Assembly (NCBI GenBank): GCA_011109175.1 | Contig: RDEW01000049.1 | Location: 246,945 to 310,944 of the forward strand | Length of the DNA stretch: 64,000 bases | Source of the DNA: Dicyema japonicum | Taxonomy: Eukaryota > Animalia > Dicyemida | Reading direction: 5' to 3' | Part shown: positions 11,896-49,028 of the stretch, in pieces | How the letters are laid out: every line of letters begins with the position of its first letter | How positions within the stretch are numbered: position 1 is the stretch's first letter | The notes under the pieces: generated by a model | Database searches by the model: none | Told to the model about the DNA's origin: nothing | What the model saw: the letters and a program-made list of their open reading frames with translations, nothing else | Program-made: the position numbers and the translations under genes

Positions 11896-12064
11896 GAAAA
11901 CTGACACGTGTCTTAAACTAAGCTAACACTTATCATGGTCGAAATCCTTATAAAATTATTTATTAATTTTATATTTTAATAATTATATAAAAATAAAATT
12001 TCATCATCTTAATAAAGCTAGTTTATTTCACGTGTTATTGTAAATATCGTCAACAATCAGTCTA

Positions 12065-15000
12065 ATGGATTTTCCCAAGTCTACTACCAAGTTAAAAGCG
12101 ATACATGAGGTTGAGAATCAAATGAGGGAAAAATGGAAGAAGCTTAAATGCTTCGAATCTGATGCAAAGGAGGGGAAGACAAAGTACATGATGACATTCC
12201 CCTATCCATACATGAACGGACTTGCCCATTTAGGCCACATGTATTCCCTTTCTAAGTGCGAGGTACTTGTTCTGACTGATTTAGTTCACAATTTCCTTCC
12301 GTCGGCTGATTGGGGAGAACTGTCTCTTCCCCTTTGCATTTCACTGCACGGGGATGCCCATAAAAGTGAGTTGTGACAGACTTTCACTTGAATTGAGTGA
12401 GGGAGTGGCTCAGAGTGAGAAGACTAATTCCACGTTTGTGGACCCTGAGAAGGAATTGGAGAACAAAATGAAGAGTCGTCGGGTCATCTTTGTTTTTACA
12501 ACTACAGAGCAAGGCATCTTCAAAAATTGGGGGGAAACAGACTCAGTACGAGACCGTCAGGGATGCCACTCAGCTAGATGATGTTAGTGAGTTCACTCAA
12601 CCTACCAAATGGATAGAATTCTTCCCAAAGCAGTGGAAGAGTGACTTGGATAGGTTTGGGGCGAAGGTAGTGTGTTTGCCAACTCTAGGTGGACTGGAGG
12701 AGATCCTTTGTCACAACTGATATTAATCCCTTCTATGACTCGTTTGTTTGCTGGTTTATTACCAAATTGAGGAAATATATCCACTTTGGGAAGAGGTAGA
12801 GTTTATATTTATGACAGGTACACCATATACTCCCCCAAGGATGAGCAACCCTGTATGGACCACGACAGATCTTCCGGAGAAGGACTGTCATATACAGAAT
12901 TTACCCTCATTAAATACAAGCTTGAGGATAATCTGTTCCTAATCGCTGCAACCAGAAGACCGGAGACGATGTATGGGCAGGTCTGCTGTTGGGTACACCC
13001 TAACATTGAATACATTCAATTCACAGTCGATGGGACAGGCTATATCGCCGATTCCCATGCACTCAGAAATATACAACATCAATATGATAATGTCGTGGTT
13101 GGACGTACCCTTCGTAGCTCAGATCTGATTGGAAGGACTGTTCAACTCCCTTATTCTAACAGAATAGCCCCCATTCTTCCATACAATAACGTTAAAAATG
13201 ACATGGGAACAGGAATTGTAGCCAGTGTCCCCTCTGACTCTCCTGATGACTATATGGCGCTTTTACAAGCAAAAAAGAACGACGTTGTCCAAGTTTTGTC
13301 ATTTGTAGAAACTGGGAGACCTTGTTAAAAATATTGAGCCAATCCCTGTGGTTGCTGTGGGGGAGTTGGGGACAATGTCTGCTCCCACTCTGTGTGAACA
13401 GTTTGGAGTGAAGGGAGTCAACGATTCTGAACCACTGGGTAAGGCGTCTCAGATTGCGTATTCTCGGGGATTTCACGAAGGAGTGGTGATTTCTAGTTAC
13501 TAGTAGATTATGGCAGCTGGTAAATATTCGGGGATGTGTGTTCAGGAAGCCAGACCGTTAATAAAGGAGGAAATGATCAAAGATGGTTTTGCAATTAACT
13601 ACGCGGAACCTGACGGACGAATAATATCCCGATCTAGTGATGTCTGTGTTGTCGCCCTTTGTGATCAATGGTGGACTTTTGGTTGATTGTTAGGTACATT
13701 GACTATGGGAATGCTGAGTGGAAGCAGAGTGTCCGTGAGTTGGTGGGTAGACTCAATCTGACTGAACAAGTCCGTAATAACTTTGTCTATACAATTGACA
13801 ATTTACACGAGCATGCCATGTCTCGTAGTTATGGATTAGGTATCCCCATGTAACCAACGTAAGGAAGCCGGGTTCCCTGGGATACACAGTACTTGATTGA
13901 GTCTCTCTCTGATTCGACCGTGTATAATGCTTTCTACACAGTCTGTCATTTTCTTCAGGGTAACATCGACGGAAGTGAACGTGGTCCATTTGGAATTGAG
14001 TACACTTAATGGTTATTGGTAGACCACGTGACATGACTCATCAAGTGTGGGATTACATATTTTATAACAACACCACCTACCCTTCTGACTGTTCCATTGA
14101 CAAGGCCCACCTGGATGCTATGAAAAGAGAATTTAACTATTGGTACCCCGTTGACCTGAGGACTTCTGGAAAGGATCTCATCCAAAATCATTTGACATAC
14201 TATTTATACACACATATTGCTGTGTGGCCGGAGGAACCAGACAAATGGCCACGTGGCATTCGGGCTAATGGATTACTCTTACTTAATAACGAAAAGGTAC
14301 CTCTTTGTCTTAAGAAAGATGTCGAAGAGTACTGGGAACTTTATGACCCTCAGGGATTGCTGTAGTAGATTTTCTGCTGATGGTTTGATTAATAATCACA
14401 CACAGCAACCCGACTGACTCTGGCTGATGCTGGGGACACTATCGACGACGCCAACTTTAATGTGGACACTGCGAACGCCATTCTCCTCAGACTTCACTCA
14501 TATTTGGAGTTTTGTAGGGACGTCCTCTCAAACCCCTCAGTCCCCACTAAGTTCAGCATTATAGATCAGGCGTTTGAGAGGTTCATTTATTACTTATGGG
14601 AGTTCTATGTTGGCTAAGGTGGAACAGACGTACTCTCACTACTATAATGGTCAGTATAAAGATGCTGTGAAGACTGGGTTTTTTGAGTTTATGGTAGTTT
14701 CTGTTACTTAGCAGAACCTTCGTGATTTATATAGAGATATGTCATCGAACTATAATTTGATGGTCAAATTCATTAAAATACAGACGATGATTCTCTCCCC
14801 AGTCTGTCCCCACCTTTGTGACTACATTTGGACCGAACTTCTCCACAATGTACTCTTATATTGTGTATTTTAGCCCAACACTATTCTCTCTGCTAATTGG
14901 AATTCATTTATGACGAAAATGTTCCCCATCAAACCTAAAAAACTGGATGGAGTATTCCCCTACATAGTACGTGCCGTTAGATCGTTCACTAAAGCTCAAG

Positions 15001-15810
15001 AGAGTTCGAAACGTAAAAATAAGGTAACTCGTAATTCAAATGGAAGTGTGTTGACAATGCTGTTATTTGGGTATCCGATAAGTACACTGACTGGCAATGC
15101 AGAGCGCTGGAAATGGTGAGGGATATGATTGCCACCACTGGGAATAAAGATAAAGCTGAAATAGCCCATCGATTTAATTCTGTGCCTGAATTATCTCCCT
15201 ACACTAAGAAACTGATGCCATTTATTACTTCTATGATGGTAACGTTTATTCATGATTTAGCCAATTATTGAGCAACAGATCAACGATGGTTCCTTTACTA
15301 AGAATGGAATGCTTAAATGTTCTTTTGATGAATTTTCCGTTCTGGAAGCCTATTTGGAGTATCTAAGGGACAAACTGAGGGTTATACCCATAGTTATTGC
15401 TAGGTTCGGAATCTGGTTGTTCGCAGAACGGGTGAAATGTGTGATAATGGACAAATCAGTGACAAATGTTACCCCAATAACCCAGTTATCATGTTTGATC
15501 AGATGGTTGACTTTTTGGTTATTCCTAGAACTACACACGTGTCAGATTCATCAACCGAGACCGTTATGCTGGGTTCTTTGAGGAACAACTGGTTGTATTC
15601 AGTGGTGATAGTTGTGGGAATGTGTGTGACAGAATGATTACTCGATTGTCTCTAAGTGAGTGTGTTTGTTATTGTTTAGATGATCAACGAGTTAGTCTCT
15701 CAACGTTTGACGGTAACCCCATCACCCCCGACTCGCTCTTTGATGTCGATAATGGCCAAGTCCTACTCAATGGACAGATTACCAAAAATCTGGTATATTC
15801 AGTATATTAG
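12065..15810 (+). CDS. LARS1: Cytosolic leucyl-tRNA synthetase, about 19 micro-introns
   Basis: [13 protein letters not shown] (HIGH motif), [62 protein letters not shown], and KMSKSTGNF after splicing. Example introns 12263-12284 (22 nt), 12483-12507 (25 nt), 14581-14602 (22 nt). Confidence 0.97.
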
Positions 15811-32429: not shown

Positions 32430-34205
<1,776 letters not shown>

Positions 34206-37200
34206 AATTGTGCCTATTATTTTTATTATTTTGAAAATATTAATTAATTTAAATTTCAATTAATTTTGATTTAATGATTTTTATTATTAAATAAAATTGT
34301 GTTTGTGCTTTGATCCGTATTTGGATTAATTTAAATCCACATGGCCCCATGTACTGCTGTGTAGTTAATTGATTGAAAATTTATCCCCAGTCCTTTGAGT
34401 GAAGGAAATCGATAGCTAACAGGAAAGTAACAACCAAAAGTGGACGCTCTTAGAGATCACCCTGGTTAGCACATAAATCGAAGGCGGGCAAGGAAAAAGA
34501 AAAGAGGTGTCTCAATCAGTTGTCCAGAGGGCAGAAGAGACACAGCAACAACGTATGTTGTCCGATTATGTTCATATATTGTTGTAAAACCTTGTGGAGA
34601 CGCGTCATGCGGACACGAACTCCCTGGGCATCGCTTAAGTAGCAGTTTGCAAATCAATAACTTGTTCTTCAAAAAATTAATCATTTAAATTCTTCAGAGT
34701 CTCTTTATTTTGGGTGTAACTAGTGATAATACAGGTCCCGAACCACTGAATTGGTCTTGTCTCACTATATGGCAATAATATTGTCCTCAACCACTGACAA
34801 TCAAACCAATGACTTCCTCCTTGTTGACTGGTATACGACTAAAACCTCAGTATTTTTTTGGTGGATTTAAGATGAAGGATTCAAGTTGATTTCTTGTGTT
34901 GTTTCGACTCTTTCGACGGTACTGTACCTATTAGCAAAAGTTCCCATTAAGTTTATTCCACGTGGGTTCGGGGCTTTTACATATTGAGATGACTGATCTG
35001 TGGTCGTTCACTTTGAATTTCTTTGAGGATCAGCAAATTATTTGCAAGAAGTCTGTTGTTGGTCCTATAAAAGGATGTTCCAATAAGTTCCTGAAAATGT
35101 TTCTGCGGAGCTGTCAATCAGGGTAAAATAGGACTAATTTCGGAAGCTGAGATCCCATCATTTGTTTTTGCCGAAATTTTTTTTTTTGGGAGTTTTGAGA
35201 CAATAATAACTAGCTGTCGTTTTCTTTAAATAATTCAAATGGTCCCCCAACATAATTGACGTTACCTCCCAAGACGGCAACTGGAGAAATTACTGGGTCT
35301 CAAGTATGTCGAGGCTAGAGAATTGTTCTGAAAAGGGAATTGGAGATCATTGTACAAGTGTTGGCTGAAATAACAGACCTCCATACTCTATCTGTCCCCT
35401 TACTTACACCAATCCAATTGAGAATGTATTCAGTGGATGGAAAAACCAGTTTCCAGAAAAGGGGCTGAAAATGATTGAGTTTGATTAACAGCAAATTTGA
35501 ATGCACATTAAATCCCAAAATGGCGGATTCGAGTGGATTATTGATTTCTTGTAATGTGAATCTCGAATAAATAAAATTATTCTAAAGACCAAGGGTAAAG
35601 CAACACTAACTCCTTGACCCTACCACCAATTCCAGAACTCGTATCCAGGTAACGAAATTGTCTCCCAGTGGAAAGAACGTTGGATCCTTTTGATTGCCGG
35701 CCAGGCATTGGGCGTTTCCTTAGTAAGGTGAATCTAACGACTCCATCAGAGGGAAGACAATTTAATTTTTAACAAAAATATTTATTTAAAATAATATAAT
35801 TGTTTTTGCATTTTTTATTGAACCAGAAAACCACAGTCATAGCCAGAATTAAAAAAATCAAGTGATCTCGGCTTCCCTCAGAAGTTTTCGCATGCTCGGA
35901 TTAGAAGGAAGTGCCGTCCGGGTAACTCTTGGTTCAGTAAATTAAAAAAATATTAAATAGTTCTTTCGTCGAGGGAGGAGAATAGGGCCACGTTGAGGTC
36001 TCTGCTTGAGCGTGGTGGGATAACGTGATTATTTAGTTTGGTGTTACTGTGATCTTTGGTATTATTGACTCATTCTGACAAATCACGTGTTTTGGGCATT
36101 AATATTCTATATCTTCCGTATTAATTTCACGAACAGGTCCCCGATGCCGAGAAGATCATCTCGGGAACAAAAATGTTATTTCTCATTGAGTATGTGCATC
36201 AAAAGTTTTAGGCCTTTCTGTCATGAGCCAGAACGACCTCTTTTCATAACTTTTCCATCCCTGAAAAAGAATAGAGGGCATCCAATGAGAACCTTACCAC
36301 AAGTCTAGACTATCCTCGCATCAGGAACAATGCCTCCAGGCAGTTTTGGACATTATCTTTAATTACTACATCTTCCGTTCAAGAGCGGAACCTATTTTCA
36401 AAATTCTTTCAAAGATTTGCTAGTGTCATCTAGCCAACATCGTCTTGCCTGTTTGTTGTAGAGGGCGTATTCCGAGAGCGGTACTTGGCTCAACCCTCTG
36501 AGTTTTGGGTACCTTCCTGGACGATGAATGCGTCCGTATTGGAATATCATTACTACTGGAAGTAAAAGTCAGATCGACTGTTTTGGCCTACACCCTCTCT
36601 CCTGCATGAAGAGAGCAGGCGGATTTCTCAGACACATGGCCTTGAACGCTTTGGACGCCGTCAGACATCCCTCCATGCTCGAACCAGTTGCTCTTTGCAG
36701 TCGTGACGGACAACGACCAGGTGGGATGACAAACCTCTTGTCTGGGACGTCACCTGCACCGACACGTTTTCCCTTGTAACCGACTGTTTTCAGTTTTTTG
36801 TAAGAATAATAGTCATTCAACATGGCTCAGTTAGATCTATGAGTTGTTTTTAATAAATTTGATTTTTTATAAAAATGAGGCAGATTCTTAAATTTTGTAA
36901 GAGAAAAATGTTTTTGGACCATTAGATGAGGGAAACGGGGAATTGGAGAGAATTGAGTTATCCAATGTTATTGATTGGGAAAGTGAGGCCGTTGACAGGG
37001 AATCCTAAGTTCGAGACCATTAATCTACAGACAGAGGATGATAACAGTTATCCAATGTTATTGATTGGGAAAGTGAGGCCGTTGACAGGGAATCCTAAGT
37101 TCGAGACCATTAATCTACAGACAGAGGATGATAACCGTGGGGGTCACAGTCTAATGACTCAACACCTAATAGACTATTATCACACAAAACAGCAATTAAT

Positions 37201-37230: not shown

Positions 37231-38706
37231 TTAAAGAATATATCCCAAATCCAGTTTCTTCTTGGACTTTACCTCATAAATCCCATCCAGAAAGTCAATA
37301 TGATAAATTGTAGTCTGTTCTTTCCGTAAAGCGATCATCCCCTAAAGTAAACACAGTCCCCACCGCCTCGATGCAGACCGCTCTGCACTGTGAACCGTTA
37401 AAGTCCTCCGTGGCCCTCGCTAATTCATGGAAGTTGACATCATCACTGGTTTTACCCTAAAGGTACCCTACAGTCATCTTCCGAGAGTGGATCTGCATTA
37501 TCCTCACCCTCGCCTCCTCATTCGGGTTTGGGAACTCAATTTTCTTGTCGAATCTCCCAGATCTCAGCAGAGCCGTGTCCAGGATGTCCACTCTGTTGGT
37601 CGCCGCGATCACCTTGATGTCAGCATTAGGCTGGAATCCGTCCATTTGCGACAATAGCTCAATCATGGTCCGCTGAACCTCCCGGTCCCCAGTTTTCTCG
37701 CTGTCAAACCGTTTCGTCCCTGCCAATAAGACAGTCCTCACCAATGGCGTCTAATTCGTCTATGAAGATCACCGCCGGTGCCTTCTCCTTGGCAAGATTG
37801 AATGCATCCCTCACCATTTTGGCTCCGTCCCCAATGAACATTTGCACCAATTGAGGACCAGCCAGCTTCAAGAAGGTAGACTTTGTTTGAGCAGCACAGG
37901 CCCGGGCCATCAGTGTTTTCCCGGTCCCTGGGACTCCGTACAATAGGACCCCTAGGTTTCGCACAGAAGCTTACCCTTGGGCGGTTCTATTCCCAGCTTC
38001 TCAAAGTTCTCCCGGTGGTCCATGGGCAACACCACAGCCTCCACCAGCTCCTCAATTTGCTTATCTAGTCCCCCAATGTCGCTGTACTCCTCCGTGGGGC
38101 GCTCATCTACCTCCATGGCTTTCACGCGAGAGTCGTACCTAAGGTTACAAAGGACACCAACTCATGAGGAAGTTTCTCCAAGATTAGGTAGCTGTCCTTG
38201 TTCACTCCCTGAACTTAGAGTCCCCCTTACCACTAGGTCGTCGGGCCTAAGGTCATCTGGATCCACGAGACCGATCACTGGAAGAAAATAGGTTTGTCGG
38301 GTCGACGTCTTCACGATCGCACATTTTCCACGTCTTTGAGAATCAATGTTCACGTTGGCACCTTCCTCCTCACAGTCATCGTTGTCTACGTCGAAAATCA
38401 GGAATATATAGGATTTTGTACCTCAGTCACGTTGGAGACCAAATAAGGGAGGATCTTGTTGACTTTTAATTTCTCTTTACTCTCTTTGGTCTTCCCCTTC
38501 ATGTGTTTTTTGTCGTATTCAATGGTTTGGAGTTCGGATTGCAAACACTTAGATTTATACGGTTTCTTACGTATATTTCGTCCTCAATCAGCTTAGTCCA
38601 ACTACGGATCTCATCTGTGGGGAGGTTGAGCACTTCTTCGTCGCCCAATGGTAATTCCTAGATTTATTAGTAAAATGACAACAACGTCCATCCCCTGGTC
38701 ATCCAT
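37231..38706 (-). CDS. PSMC3: 26S proteasome AAA-ATPase Rpt5, 9 micro-introns
   Basis: [85 protein letters not shown]. One intron ends in TG (38399-38421). Confidence 0.97.
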
Positions 38707-45662: not shown

Positions 45663-46727
45663 TCATCCAATTCGTTGTTTCTTCTTGTCAACCCAATCAT
45701 AGCGACCGTCATCCACTAACCCTCTGTTCAGAAACAGCACCTTGAACAATTGCAGTAGATAACAGTAATCTGGGGTCTCATCAAACCTCAGACAACGGAC
45801 GTAGTTCAGGTACACAGCAAACTCGTTGGGGATCTGCTGACACAGAGACTCCACAGAAGTCGAAATCTTCTTCTCACAGATCCTCTCATACTTCTGTTTC
45901 CGGTCCTTGGCCTTCAGACCCTGCCACGGCAGGTCCCCCCGCATCAAATACACCAACAGGTACCCCAGAGATTCCAGGTCGTCTCGTCTACTCTGTTCGA
46001 TTCCCATGTGGGCGTTTATGCTGGCGTACCTAGCCGTCCCAACGAGACTCCTGTTGTCCCTGTAGGGAATGTGGACACCTGACGAGTTAGCGAATTTCTT
46101 TGACAGNAGGTACCCCAGAGATTCCAGGTCGTCTCGTCTACTCTGTTCGATTCCCATGTGGGCGTTTATGCTGGCGTACCTAGCCGTCCCAACGAGACTC
46201 CTGTTGTCCCTGTAGGGAATGTGGACACCTGACGAGTTGGCGAATTTCTTTGACAGGCCAAAGTCGATTACGTATACGACTCTGTGGAGACGTCCATTTC
46301 CCATGACAAAGTTGTCTGGCTTGATGTCCCGGTGTATCATGTTCTTGGAGTGGATGTACTCGAGACGGGAAATCAGCTGCTGCGCCAACATCAAAACGGT
46401 CTTCAAAGAGAAGGTACGGGAACAAAATGTGAATAGATCCTCAATTGAGGGTCCAAGTAGGTCCATGATGAGAATATTGAAGTTACTGTTCCTCGTAAAG
46501 CCGATAACATTCGGTATCCCTTTCTCTCCCTCCAGGCATTTGTAAATTTTATACTCAAACTCCAACTGGGGTTGTGAAGTGATACTGTTTTCCATTTTGA
46601 GGGCAACCTCCTGCCCGTTTATGATATTCAGACCCAAGTAGATCCGCCCAAATGAACCACTTCCAATCTTTTTAACGAGTTTGTATCTGTTTGCCACTAT
46701 AAAATTCAGTTTGTCCACCTCATTCAT
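45663..46727 (-). CDS. Casein kinase 1 (alpha-like), intronless
   Basis: [63 protein letters not shown]. The 39-aa internal repeat at the N (about 46107) is a scaffold overlap. Confidence 0.93.
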
Positions 46728-48176: not shown

Positions 48177-49028
48177 TCACTGAGAATGCCTAAGAGTAGT
48201 GGCAGGCTGTCTCGATTGCAACCCATAATAAGCAGCCGACAAAAGTTGATTAGAATACCCCATCTGCTGGTACGCCAACTCATCCATAGTGGCTCGACTG
48301 TAACCTCCGGTATCCAACTTAAACGCAAACTGGAAGAACAGCTGCTTAGAATAATGATTCCAATGAGTCCAAAATGTCTTGTAGTCCTTGTCCACCTCCC
48401 TACTTGGCACCTTAAAAGCTATCGTCTCATAAGGCTCCGCAGCAAAGAGTAAGTACTGCCAGGCCTTGTCTGGAGGTTCCACCCGCTGCTCGTAGGCCGA
48501 CATAAATCGGTGTCTCGGGGAGATCCCGTCCACAATTTCGGGGTAATCTATCTGGAACAACAAGCTCTGTTGCCCAGTCTCTGGGTCTCTCTGTTTGGTC
48601 ACTAAAAATTAAAAGAACTCTTCACCCTTGTAACCAGGACGCCCTATAGTCACGAATTTTCTGATTTCCACAGGCATTTGTACCACTGAAGGCATGGGAG
48701 CATCCACCTGAGAGTCTTTGAAGGCTCTCTCACCACTAAAGTAAAAGGATCGTGGTTACAGGTTCGCCTGGTGCTTTTTCCCCTGAGTGTGAGTGAGGTA
48801 ACTGGCCTCATTGGAGTGGATGGTTAGGCAGAGTTTGCATTCGAAGGTCCCCAGGTGATTTTTCATGAAATAGGGATCCTTTAATGGTTGAAGAAATTAT
48901 ACCTTGTCTAAGTCAATAGTTTCCATTGCAAGAAGTCGAAGTCTCTCTCTTCTGTCTCTGTTGGCATCTGAGGCACTAGCAACTCCACCAGATCCAGTGT
49001 TTGCGCCTGGACGATGTTGGAAATCCAT
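48177..49028 (-). CDS. SF3A2: Splicing factor 3A subunit 2 (U2 snRNP), 3 micro-introns
   Basis: MDFQHRPG..TGSGGVAS, DPYFMKNHLG.FECKLCLTIHSNEASYL.HTQGKKHQ, IGRPGYKVTKQRDPETGQQSLLFQIDYPEI, FAAEPYETIAFKVPSREVD. Confidence 0.97.

What the first reader, a model, noticed from the sequence alone, without database searches (positions are those of the whole stretch)
38399..38421. Non-canonical GT-TG micro-intron in the proteasome gene PSMC3
Seen: the minus strand reads ...AAC GTG ACT GAG | gtacaaaatcctatatattcctg | ATT TTC GAC GTA GAC..., a 23-nt segment with a normal GT donor, no internal AG and a CTG end. Established: Rpt5 orthologues read LVSNV(I/T)ELLDVD, and only this excision gives the collinear SNVTEIFDVD. 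Retention shifts the frame. The next AG (36 nt from the donor) is also out of frame, and sliding the boundaries gives no canonical pair. Inference: the spliceosome accepts a TG acceptor when it lies at the typical micro-intron distance. The rare TG acceptors known in other animals generally sit beside an AG; this one does not.
Basis: partly seen in the sequence, partly recalled or inferred. Interest (0 to 1): 0.9.

Follow-up and report, generated by a model that had tools for sequence, protein, structure and literature searches.

The report
Tiny proteasome-gene intron ending in TG
An essential proteasome gene of a micro-intron animal (most likely the dicyemid Dicyema japonicum) has a 23-base intron at an ancient intron position that ends in TG instead of the near-universal AG, which suggests its splicing machinery can pick the intron end by distance; no RNA reads could be obtained to prove this.

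Summary
On the minus strand, 38421-38399 is a 23-nt segment, GT...TG, with no internal AG, inside an otherwise intact 10-exon Rpt5/PSMC3 gene.

- **Collinearity:** removing exactly this segment joins exon 3 (ends at human Rpt5 residue 95) to exon 4 (starts at residue 96).
- **Ancient position:** mollusc, annelid and hemichordate PSMC3 genes have a phase-0 intron at this exact place. All nine introns here sit at positions shared with the mollusc.
- **Alternatives are worse:** the best in-frame GT-AG option (53 nt) scores 26 bits lower on an orthologue profile. The first downstream AG (+36) shifts the frame.
- **Second case:** a 23-nt GT...TG intron splits the invariant ELGGK|S|P motif of ALDH3 at 33367-33345. 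DNA contigs of another haplotype keep its TG.
- **Background:** fifty curated neighbouring introns are all GT-AG, 20-26 nt.

Not shown:
- No RNA junction evidence was obtained. My one read-mapping call hit genomic DNA runs.
- The T at 38400 was not independently checked.

Other first-stage readers noted similar GT-TG introns elsewhere in this genome; none has been checked.

Verdict: probably a real TG-acceptor micro-intron (about 0.7).

The parts
38399..38421 (-). Candidate 23-nt micro-intron, GT...TG (intron 3 of PSMC3, phase 0)
   Evidence: Sequence read. Its excision gives the best orthologue-profile score, 759.1 bits. The position is orthologous to introns in three other phyla.
38420..38421 (-). 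GT donor dinucleotide
   Evidence: All 50 curated introns in the window start with GT.
38399..38400 (-). TG at the 3' end where AG is expected. The T is + strand A at 38400.
   Evidence: The base was not independently verified, because the differences table was cut off before this position.
38405..38405 (-). A at -7 from the 3' end, a possible branch point
   Evidence: In the 48 curated introns analysed by position, A occupies -7 in 60% and -8 in 50%. The branch-point role is inferred.
38386..38387 (-). First downstream AG, ending at +36 from the donor and 13 nt past the TG
   Evidence: Using it shifts the frame and gives a 91-aa product.
38422..38547 (-). PSMC3 exon 3, ending ...[10 protein letters not shown]
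   Evidence: Aligns to human Rpt5 residues 55-95.
38231..38398 (-). PSMC3 exon 4, starting IFDVDNDD...
   Evidence: Aligns to human Rpt5 residues 96/97-151.
37231..38706 (-). Whole Rpt5/PSMC3 gene: 10 exons and 422-424 aa. The other 8 introns are GT-AG, 21-23 nt (intron 1 is 22 or 28 nt).
   Evidence: Gene model. About 74-76% identity to animal Rpt5 across the full length.
33345..33367 (-). Second 23-nt GT...TG intron, in ALDH3, phase 2, splitting ELGGK|S|P
   Evidence: The flanking exons end at K212 and start at P214 of human ALDH3A2 (4qgk_A), and the split codon AG|T encodes S213. Contigs of three DNA runs differ from the window only at 33354 inside it.

Best explanation
The 23-nt segment is a real, ancestral spliceosomal intron of the only visible Rpt5 gene copy. 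It is removed at GT...TG by the ordinary U2-type spliceosome.

In this genome nearly all introns are 20-26 nt, with little signal beyond GT, an A about 7-8 nt from the 3' end, and the final AG. I infer that the position of the 3' cut is set mainly by geometry, meaning distance from the 5' splice site or branch point. A YTG at the right distance (+23, A at -7) can then serve when no AG is present between +20 and +35. The final G is kept and only the -2 base is relaxed.

Shown: intron identity, position, length, donor, lack of a canonical alternative, and recurrence in ALDH3.

Inferred: actual cleavage at the TG, the distance rule, and whether the downstream AG helps early recognition.
For: - **Sequence and frame:** confirmed.
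- **Intact gene:** it has 8 canonical micro-introns and all AAA motifs.
- **Exact collinearity:** exon ends match human Rpt5 residues 95|96, and the model aligns gaplessly over 407 aa.
- **Orthologous intron:** Lottia, Helobdella and Saccoglossus have a phase-0 intron at the same site. All 9 introns here are at Lottia positions and phases.
- **Profile of 97 orthologues:** GT-TG 23 nt scores 759.1 bits. GT-TC 20 nt scores 755.2, AT-AC 20 nt 752.2, GT-AG 53 nt 733.3. The +36 AG gives a truncated product.
- **Fits the local intron class:** 50 curated GT-AG introns are 20-26 nt with a mode of 22-23 nt, and A at -7 is found in 60% of the 48 analysed by position.
- **Second case:** the 23-nt GT...TG intron in the invariant ALDH motif is carried by contigs of another haplotype. 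That haplotype also lacks the assembly's 89-nt duplication.
- **Variant spectrum:** A<->T changes were the rarest variant class between haplotypes, 7 of 102 in X2. Repeated AG>TG by random mutation or error is therefore unlikely.
- **Leads only:** other first-stage readers noted at least 6 further GT-TG 22-23-nt candidates in this genome. These are unchecked.
- **Precedent:** TG is the known non-AG acceptor of U2 introns (PMC2374985).
Against: - No transcript evidence was obtained. The runs laid were genomic DNA, and the protein databases hold no proteins from this organism.
- The T at 38400 was not checked in independent reads, because the differences table was truncated.
- In humans TG acceptors are never the sole 3' site, and AG>TG mutations are not spliced at the TG (PMC2374985).
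- The protein profile separates the 23-nt cut from 20- or 26-nt cuts by only 4-7 bits. The exact 3' boundary therefore rests partly on prior knowledge: the known TG precedent and the local length distribution.
- The assembly has local artefacts, including tandem duplications and a duplicated block at a 1-N gap.
- A second PSMC3 copy elsewhere in the genome was not excluded.
Confidence: 0.7

Rival explanations
1. Base-call or allele artefact. The functional allele has a normal CAG acceptor, and the T at 38400 is a consensus error or a rare or defective allele captured in the haploid assembly of pooled, 1.24%-heterozygous animals.
For: - The assembly comes from pooled specimens and is haplotype-merged and gap-closed (PMC6736024).
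- Local artefacts are visible: an 89-nt and a 90-nt tandem duplication missing from other contigs, and a duplicated CK1 block at an N.
- The T at 38400 could not be checked.
Against: - The ALDH3 TG is present in contigs of a second haplotype in three runs, so such TG ends are real DNA in this genome.
- A<->T changes are the rarest variant class here.
- X2 and X3 both show 3 A>T places although X3 does not cover this site, which hints at no extra A>T in the PSMC3 part. This is weak evidence.
- Several further GT-TG candidates were noted in other windows (unchecked).
- A null allele of an essential gene should not be the assembled major allele.
Confidence: 0.12
2. The TG is real DNA but is not used. 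The pre-mRNA is spliced at the +36 AG or at another site, or the intron is retained. That gives a non-functional or shortened product. This copy would be a recently disabled gene, or would yield functional mRNA only rarely.
For: - Human AG>TG mutants activate neighbouring AGs instead of the TG (PMC2374985).
- A 53-nt GT-AG option keeps the frame, at the cost of deleting 10 residues.
- Copy number of PSMC3 in the genome was not examined.
Against: - Rpt5 is an essential single-function subunit.
- The gene has no other lesion and keeps 8 intact canonical introns.
- The 53-nt option removes the conserved LLDVD strand and costs 26 bits, and the +36 AG truncates the protein at 91 aa.
- The same architecture recurs in ALDH3 on an otherwise intact haplotype.
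Confidence: 0.1
3. A real non-canonical intron with different boundaries: GG...CT (shifted by 1 nt, giving the same mRNA), GT...TC (20 nt, one extra residue), GT...TT (26 nt) or AT...AC (20 nt, 38409-38390).
For: - All of these keep the frame and score within 4-7 bits of the best model.
- Orthologues vary by one residue a few positions downstream.
Against: - GT...TG has the best profile score.
- It is the only option with both a GT donor and a final G.
- 23 nt is common in the local class (12 of 50), while 20 and 26 nt are rare (2 of 50 each).
- The AT-AC option lacks the U12 consensus, and no parallel AT-AC solution exists in ALDH3, where GT...TG at 23 nt reproduces the invariant GGKSP exactly.
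Confidence: 0.06

Closest known systems
Human TG-AG tandem 3' splice sites (Szafranski et al. 2007, PMC2374985)
   Same: - A U2-type intron with a GT donor and a TG used in place of AG.
- Pyrimidine at -3 (C) and purine at +1 (A).
- An AG lies within 28 nt (13 nt downstream here, 19 nt in ALDH3).
   Different: In humans the TG is always an alternative to a functional AG and never the sole productive site. Here only the TG junction gives an in-frame essential protein. The intron is also 23 nt rather than hundreds or thousands.
Ultra-short introns of Dicyema japonicum and myxobolid myxozoans (Hadjez et al. 2026, PMC13644364; Aruga et al. 2007, PMC2222250; Lu et al. 2019, PMC6736024)
   Same: - Length of 20-26 nt.
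- Reduced signals: GTa at the 5' end, weak A residues upstream of the 3' end, and no polypyrimidine tract.
- Conserved ancestral positions.
   Different: The published logos and annotations show AG at the 3' end. I found no report of TG ends.
Abundant non-canonical introns of appendicularians such as Oikopleura and Fritillaria (from my own knowledge, not checked here)
   Same: An animal with a compact genome in which the major spliceosome handles non-GT-AG introns in ordinary genes.
   Different: In those animals the variation is mainly at the 5' end or involves AG-AC-type pairs. Here the donor is canonical and only the -2 base of the acceptor differs.
Non-AG (BG) 3' splice sites used in budding yeast when second-step fidelity factors are weakened (from my own knowledge, not checked here)
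   Same: The last G is retained, the -2 base is relaxed, and the choice depends on distance from the branch point.
   Different: That is a mutant or low-level phenomenon in yeast. Here it would be the normal productive site of essential genes.

Membership tests
U2-type micro-intron of this genome | GT at the 5' end | tested here: met
   GTA at 38421-38419. 50 of 50 curated introns start with GT.
U2-type micro-intron of this genome | Length within the narrow class range (20-26 nt) | tested here: met
   The segment is 23 nt. In the census, 12 of 50 introns are 23 nt and the mode is 22 nt.
U2-type micro-intron of this genome | Lies at an orthologous intron position and phase | tested here: met
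   There is a phase-0 intron at YLVSNVIE|LLD in Lottia, Helobdella and Saccoglossus.
U2-type micro-intron of this genome | A residue about 7-8 nt from the 3' end | tested here: met
   There is an A at -7 (38405). The class frequency among the 48 introns analysed by position is 60% at -7 and 50% at -8. The ALDH3 case has its A at -9 instead.
U2-type micro-intron of this genome | AG at the 3' end | tested here: not met
   It ends in CTG. All 50 curated neighbours end in AG.
U2-type micro-intron of this genome | Removed from mature mRNA at these boundaries | not testable with these tools
No protein of this organism is in the databases.
TG-AG tandem acceptor (human type) | A functional AG within 28 nt of the TG | tested here: inconclusive
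   An AG lies 13 nt downstream, but using it shifts the frame. Whether it is recognised is unknown.
TG-AG tandem acceptor (human type) | The TG is used only as an alternative to the AG | not testable with these tools
   This needs RNA data. From the protein, only the TG product is functional.
U12-type AT-AC intron | ATATCCTT 5' consensus and a TCCTTAAC branch site | tested here: not met
   The 20-nt AT...AC option (38409-38390) starts ATATATTCCTG and has no branch-site match. Its profile score is 7 bits lower.
Pseudogene or assembly insertion | Other disabling lesions, or a non-intron position | tested here: not met
   The rest of the gene has no stop or frameshift, and the site is an ancestral intron position. 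Copy number in the genome was not tested.

The most novel reading that the evidence does not exclude
In this micro-intron animal the spliceosome sets the 3' cut mainly by distance. It therefore uses TG as the sole productive acceptor in a few percent of introns, including essential genes such as Rpt5 and ALDH3. In the genes I curated in this window that is 2 of 52 introns. This would be the first animal with constitutive non-AG acceptors of the major spliceosome.
Probability: 0.6. Interest if true: 0.75.

Novelty: new variant of a known kind. Interest (0 to 1): 0.6.

Why it matters
- **Splicing mechanism:** how the second step of splicing picks the 3' site is still debated: AG recognition by U2AF35 early, against geometry and non-Watson-Crick contacts late. 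A natural system where TG works as the only productive acceptor of 23-nt introns would be a clean test bed for a distance rule. It would also show that the AG rule can be relaxed in an animal.
- **Annotation:** gene finders and spliced aligners that accept only GT-AG, GC-AG and AT-AC will break or mis-model such genes in dicyemid genomes, and perhaps in myxozoan ones. That would deflate gene counts and completeness scores.

Tried and rejected
- **Read mapping.** The four runs I laid gave contigs collinear with the genome through the introns, so X1-X3 are genomic DNA of a haplotype 1-5% different, and X5 is patchy. No splice junctions appeared. The differences table was cut off before 38400.
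- **Protein databases as a route to cDNA contigs.** I searched with an exon ORF, with a representative search, with a 321-aa ORF, and with a profile of a vertebrate Rpt5 plus four exon pieces. None returned any protein of this organism.
- **A plain ORF-joining census of GT-N-XY segments.** It was swamped by chance, with about 50 passes per length and dinucleotide. I dropped it.
- **Ab initio chain models.** They were useful as drafts but wrong in places. In LARS they produced a false 46-nt and a false 23-nt intron and missed 22-nt introns. I therefore curated introns by reading them against known protein sequences.
- **'First AG at or beyond +20' rule.** It fits 48 introns but fails at ALDH3 33912-33890, where the AG at +21 must be skipped for the one at +23. 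I do not claim the rule.

Full report
**What is in the sequence.** The minus strand of 38421-38399 reads GTACAAAATCCTATATATTCCTG. It is 23 nt, starts with GT, ends with CTG and has no internal AG.
- The flanks read AAC GTG ACT GAG and ATT TTC GAC GTA GAC.
- If the segment is retained, the upstream frame meets TGA at 38400-38398.
- The boundaries can slide only one base to the left, giving GG..CT and the same mRNA.
- No GT-AG, GC-AG or AT-AC pair produces that mRNA.
- The first AG downstream ends at +36, and using it shifts the frame.

**The gene.** I built the whole gene by hand. It has 10 exons on the minus strand from 38706 to the stop at 37231, and encodes 422-424 aa.
- The other eight introns are GT-AG of 22 (or 28), 23, 22, 23, 23, 22, 21 and 22 nt.
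- The product is Rpt5/PSMC3, with Walker A and B motifs and no other lesion.
- It is 74-76% identical to animal Rpt5 over its full length. The best matches are annelid and mollusc sequences.
- Exon 3 aligns to human Rpt5 up to residue 95 and exon 4 from residue 96.
- The alignment to a vertebrate Rpt5 is gapless over 407 residues.

**It is an old intron.** I fetched the PSMC3 loci of Lottia, Helobdella and Saccoglossus and derived their exon structure by exact spliced matching.
- All three have a phase-0 intron at YLVSNVIE|LLD, exactly where the 23-nt segment sits (YLVSNVTE|IFD).
- All nine introns of the gene here share position and phase with introns of Lottia. Three Lottia introns are absent here.
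- This rules out a random insertion or frameshift artefact. It also agrees with the conserved intron positions reported for dicyemid genes (PMC2222250).

**Alternatives, scored.** I built a profile from 97 full-length orthologues and scored each possible product.

| Excision | Score or outcome |
|---|---|
| GT...TG, 23 nt | 759.1 bits |
| GT...TC, 20 nt | 755.2 bits |
| AT...AC, 20 nt | 752.2 bits |
| GT...TT, 26 nt | 752.0 bits |
| GT-AG, 53 nt | 733.3 bits |
| GT-AG, 56 nt | 730.1 bits |
| Upstream GT-AG, 59 nt | 705.3 bits |
| +36 AG | truncated at 91 aa |
| Retention | truncated at 87 aa |

- No canonical solution gives a normal protein.
- The protein alone separates the 23-nt cut from the 20- and 26-nt cuts only weakly.
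- The choice of TG also rests on the retained final G, on TG being the known exception, and on the local length distribution.

**The local intron class.** I curated 50 GT-AG introns in seven conserved genes of the window: PSMC3, a leucyl-tRNA synthetase, a Rab, ALDH3, SF3A2, a malectin-domain gene and Rpn7/PSMD6.
- They are 20-26 nt long: 18 are 22 nt, 12 are 23 nt and 11 are 24 nt.
- Composition by position was tabulated on the first 48 of these.
- Beyond GT(a) and AG, the only signal is A at -8 (50%) and -7 (60%).
- This agrees with the published description for D. japonicum (PMC13644364).
- The candidate has A at -7, C at -3 and 30% GC, so it looks like a normal member of the class except for the T at -2.

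**A second case with DNA support.** I checked it.
- The segment GTTGTCCGGTTTTGATTTGTATG is again 23 nt and GT...TG, with no canonical alternative.
- The upstream exon ends at K212 and the downstream exon starts at P214 of human ALDH3A2. The split codon AG|T supplies S213 of the invariant ELGGKSP motif.
- Contigs from three DNA runs, which differ from the window by 1-5% and so represent another haplotype, cover this intron. They differ only at 33354, in its interior.
- The same 3.1-kb contig lacks the assembly's frameshifting 89-nt duplication, so the TG sits on an intact allele. With one duplicate copy removed, the ALDH3 model is an open 485-aa frame.
- Between haplotypes, A<->T changes were the rarest class, 7 of 102 in X2. 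Repeated AG>TG by random change is therefore not expected.
- Other first-stage readers noted at least six more GT-TG 22-23-nt candidates and a 'ruler' idea elsewhere in this genome. Nobody has checked these, and I count them only as leads.

**What I could not get.** The decisive test is RNA across the junction.
- The run search listed four runs of unknown kind plus one 'DNA?' run.
- My single mapping call showed that X1-X3 are genomic: long contigs run straight through the introns. X5 is patchy and does not reach the site.
- The table of differing bases was truncated before 38400, so the T is not independently confirmed.
- One weak hint exists. X2 and X3 each show three A>T places although X3 does not cover PSMC3's 5' half.
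- Three protein searches and one representative search found no protein from this organism. No cDNA contig could be reached that way.

**Organism.** The 20-26-nt introns, the spiralian-like Rpt5, the run years (2017 and 2019), and an assembly with single-N gaps and gap-closing duplications fit Dicyema japonicum (PMC6736024, PMC13644364). This is an inference, because run and organism names were coded.

**Mechanism and comparison.**
- In humans, TG acceptors are verified in 36 genes. They are always alternatives to an AG no more than 28 nt away, and AG>TG mutations are not spliced at the TG (PMC2374985).
- Here an AG lies 13 nt downstream (19 nt in ALDH3).
- The difference is that only the TG junction is productive, in essential genes, in introns too short for a polypyrimidine tract.
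- The simplest reading is that the cut site is fixed by geometry about 22-24 nt from the donor and about 7 nt past an A. The final G would be required and the -2 base tolerated as T.
- From structural work I recall but did not check here, the 3' G pairs with the 5' G, while the -2 A contacts the branch adenosine. That would fit a softer -2 requirement.
- A simple 'first AG at or beyond +20' rule is not sufficient. It fails at ALDH3 33912-33890, where the AG at +21 must be skipped for the one at +23.

**Verdict.** The segment is an ancestral intron whose acceptor reads TG. That it is spliced at the TG is likely, about 0.7, but not demonstrated. The main rivals are an unverified base at 38400 and non-use of the TG. 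If confirmed, it is a new variant of a known rarity: a TG acceptor that is productive and effectively constitutive in micro-introns.

Noticed in passing
window 33666-33843 (minus-strand ALDH3 coding region): A tandem duplication of 89 nt inside the ALDH3 coding sequence would shift the frame. DNA contigs of X1 and X2 skip exactly 89 nt here. It is probably an assembly or gap-closing artefact, or a structural variant.
   Followed up: partly
window 36956-37135: A perfect 90-nt tandem duplication lies just 3' of PSMC3. Contigs of X2 and X3 replace the stretch 36929-37045, just before and into the first copy, with 26 other letters.
   Followed up: no
window about 45950-46260, around the single N at 46107: The casein kinase 1 gene has a block of about 49 aa ([18 protein letters not shown]...LESLGYLL) written twice, on either side of a 1-N gap. 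It looks like a scaffolding or gap-closing duplication.
   Followed up: no
window 33890-33912 (minus, ALDH3) and 14297-14318 (plus, LARS): Nearer AGs are skipped. In ALDH3 the AG ending at +21 must be passed over for the one at +23 to keep the conserved frame. In LARS an AG at +18 is passed over for +22. This fits acceptor choice by distance but not a simple first-AG rule.
   Followed up: partly
window 35444-36939: Contig depth in the DNA runs is 20-200 times that of the neighbouring sequence, up to about 54,000 against about 270 in X2, with many loose ends. This is probably a multicopy repeat family.
   Followed up: no
window 48189-49001 (minus): A gene for splicing factor SF3A2/Prp11 with three 24-nt GT-AG introns lies in the same window. 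Other genes present are leucyl-tRNA synthetase (12000-15750, plus strand, about 18 micro-introns), a Rab GTPase, a malectin-domain protein and Rpn7/PSMD6.
   Followed up: partly
window 37342 (PSMC3 exon 10 boundary): A 165-nt contig of run X5 is identical to the window and stops exactly at the intron 9/exon 10 boundary. This could mean that X5 holds both spliced and unspliced molecules and so is RNA-derived.
   Followed up: no
L001, L002, L003 against window 37231-38706: All nine PSMC3 introns here are at Lottia positions. Three Lottia introns (after STRQ, after KQIQE and after the VK preceding VIAATNRV) are missing here. Intron loss therefore accompanied intron shrinkage.
   Followed up: yes
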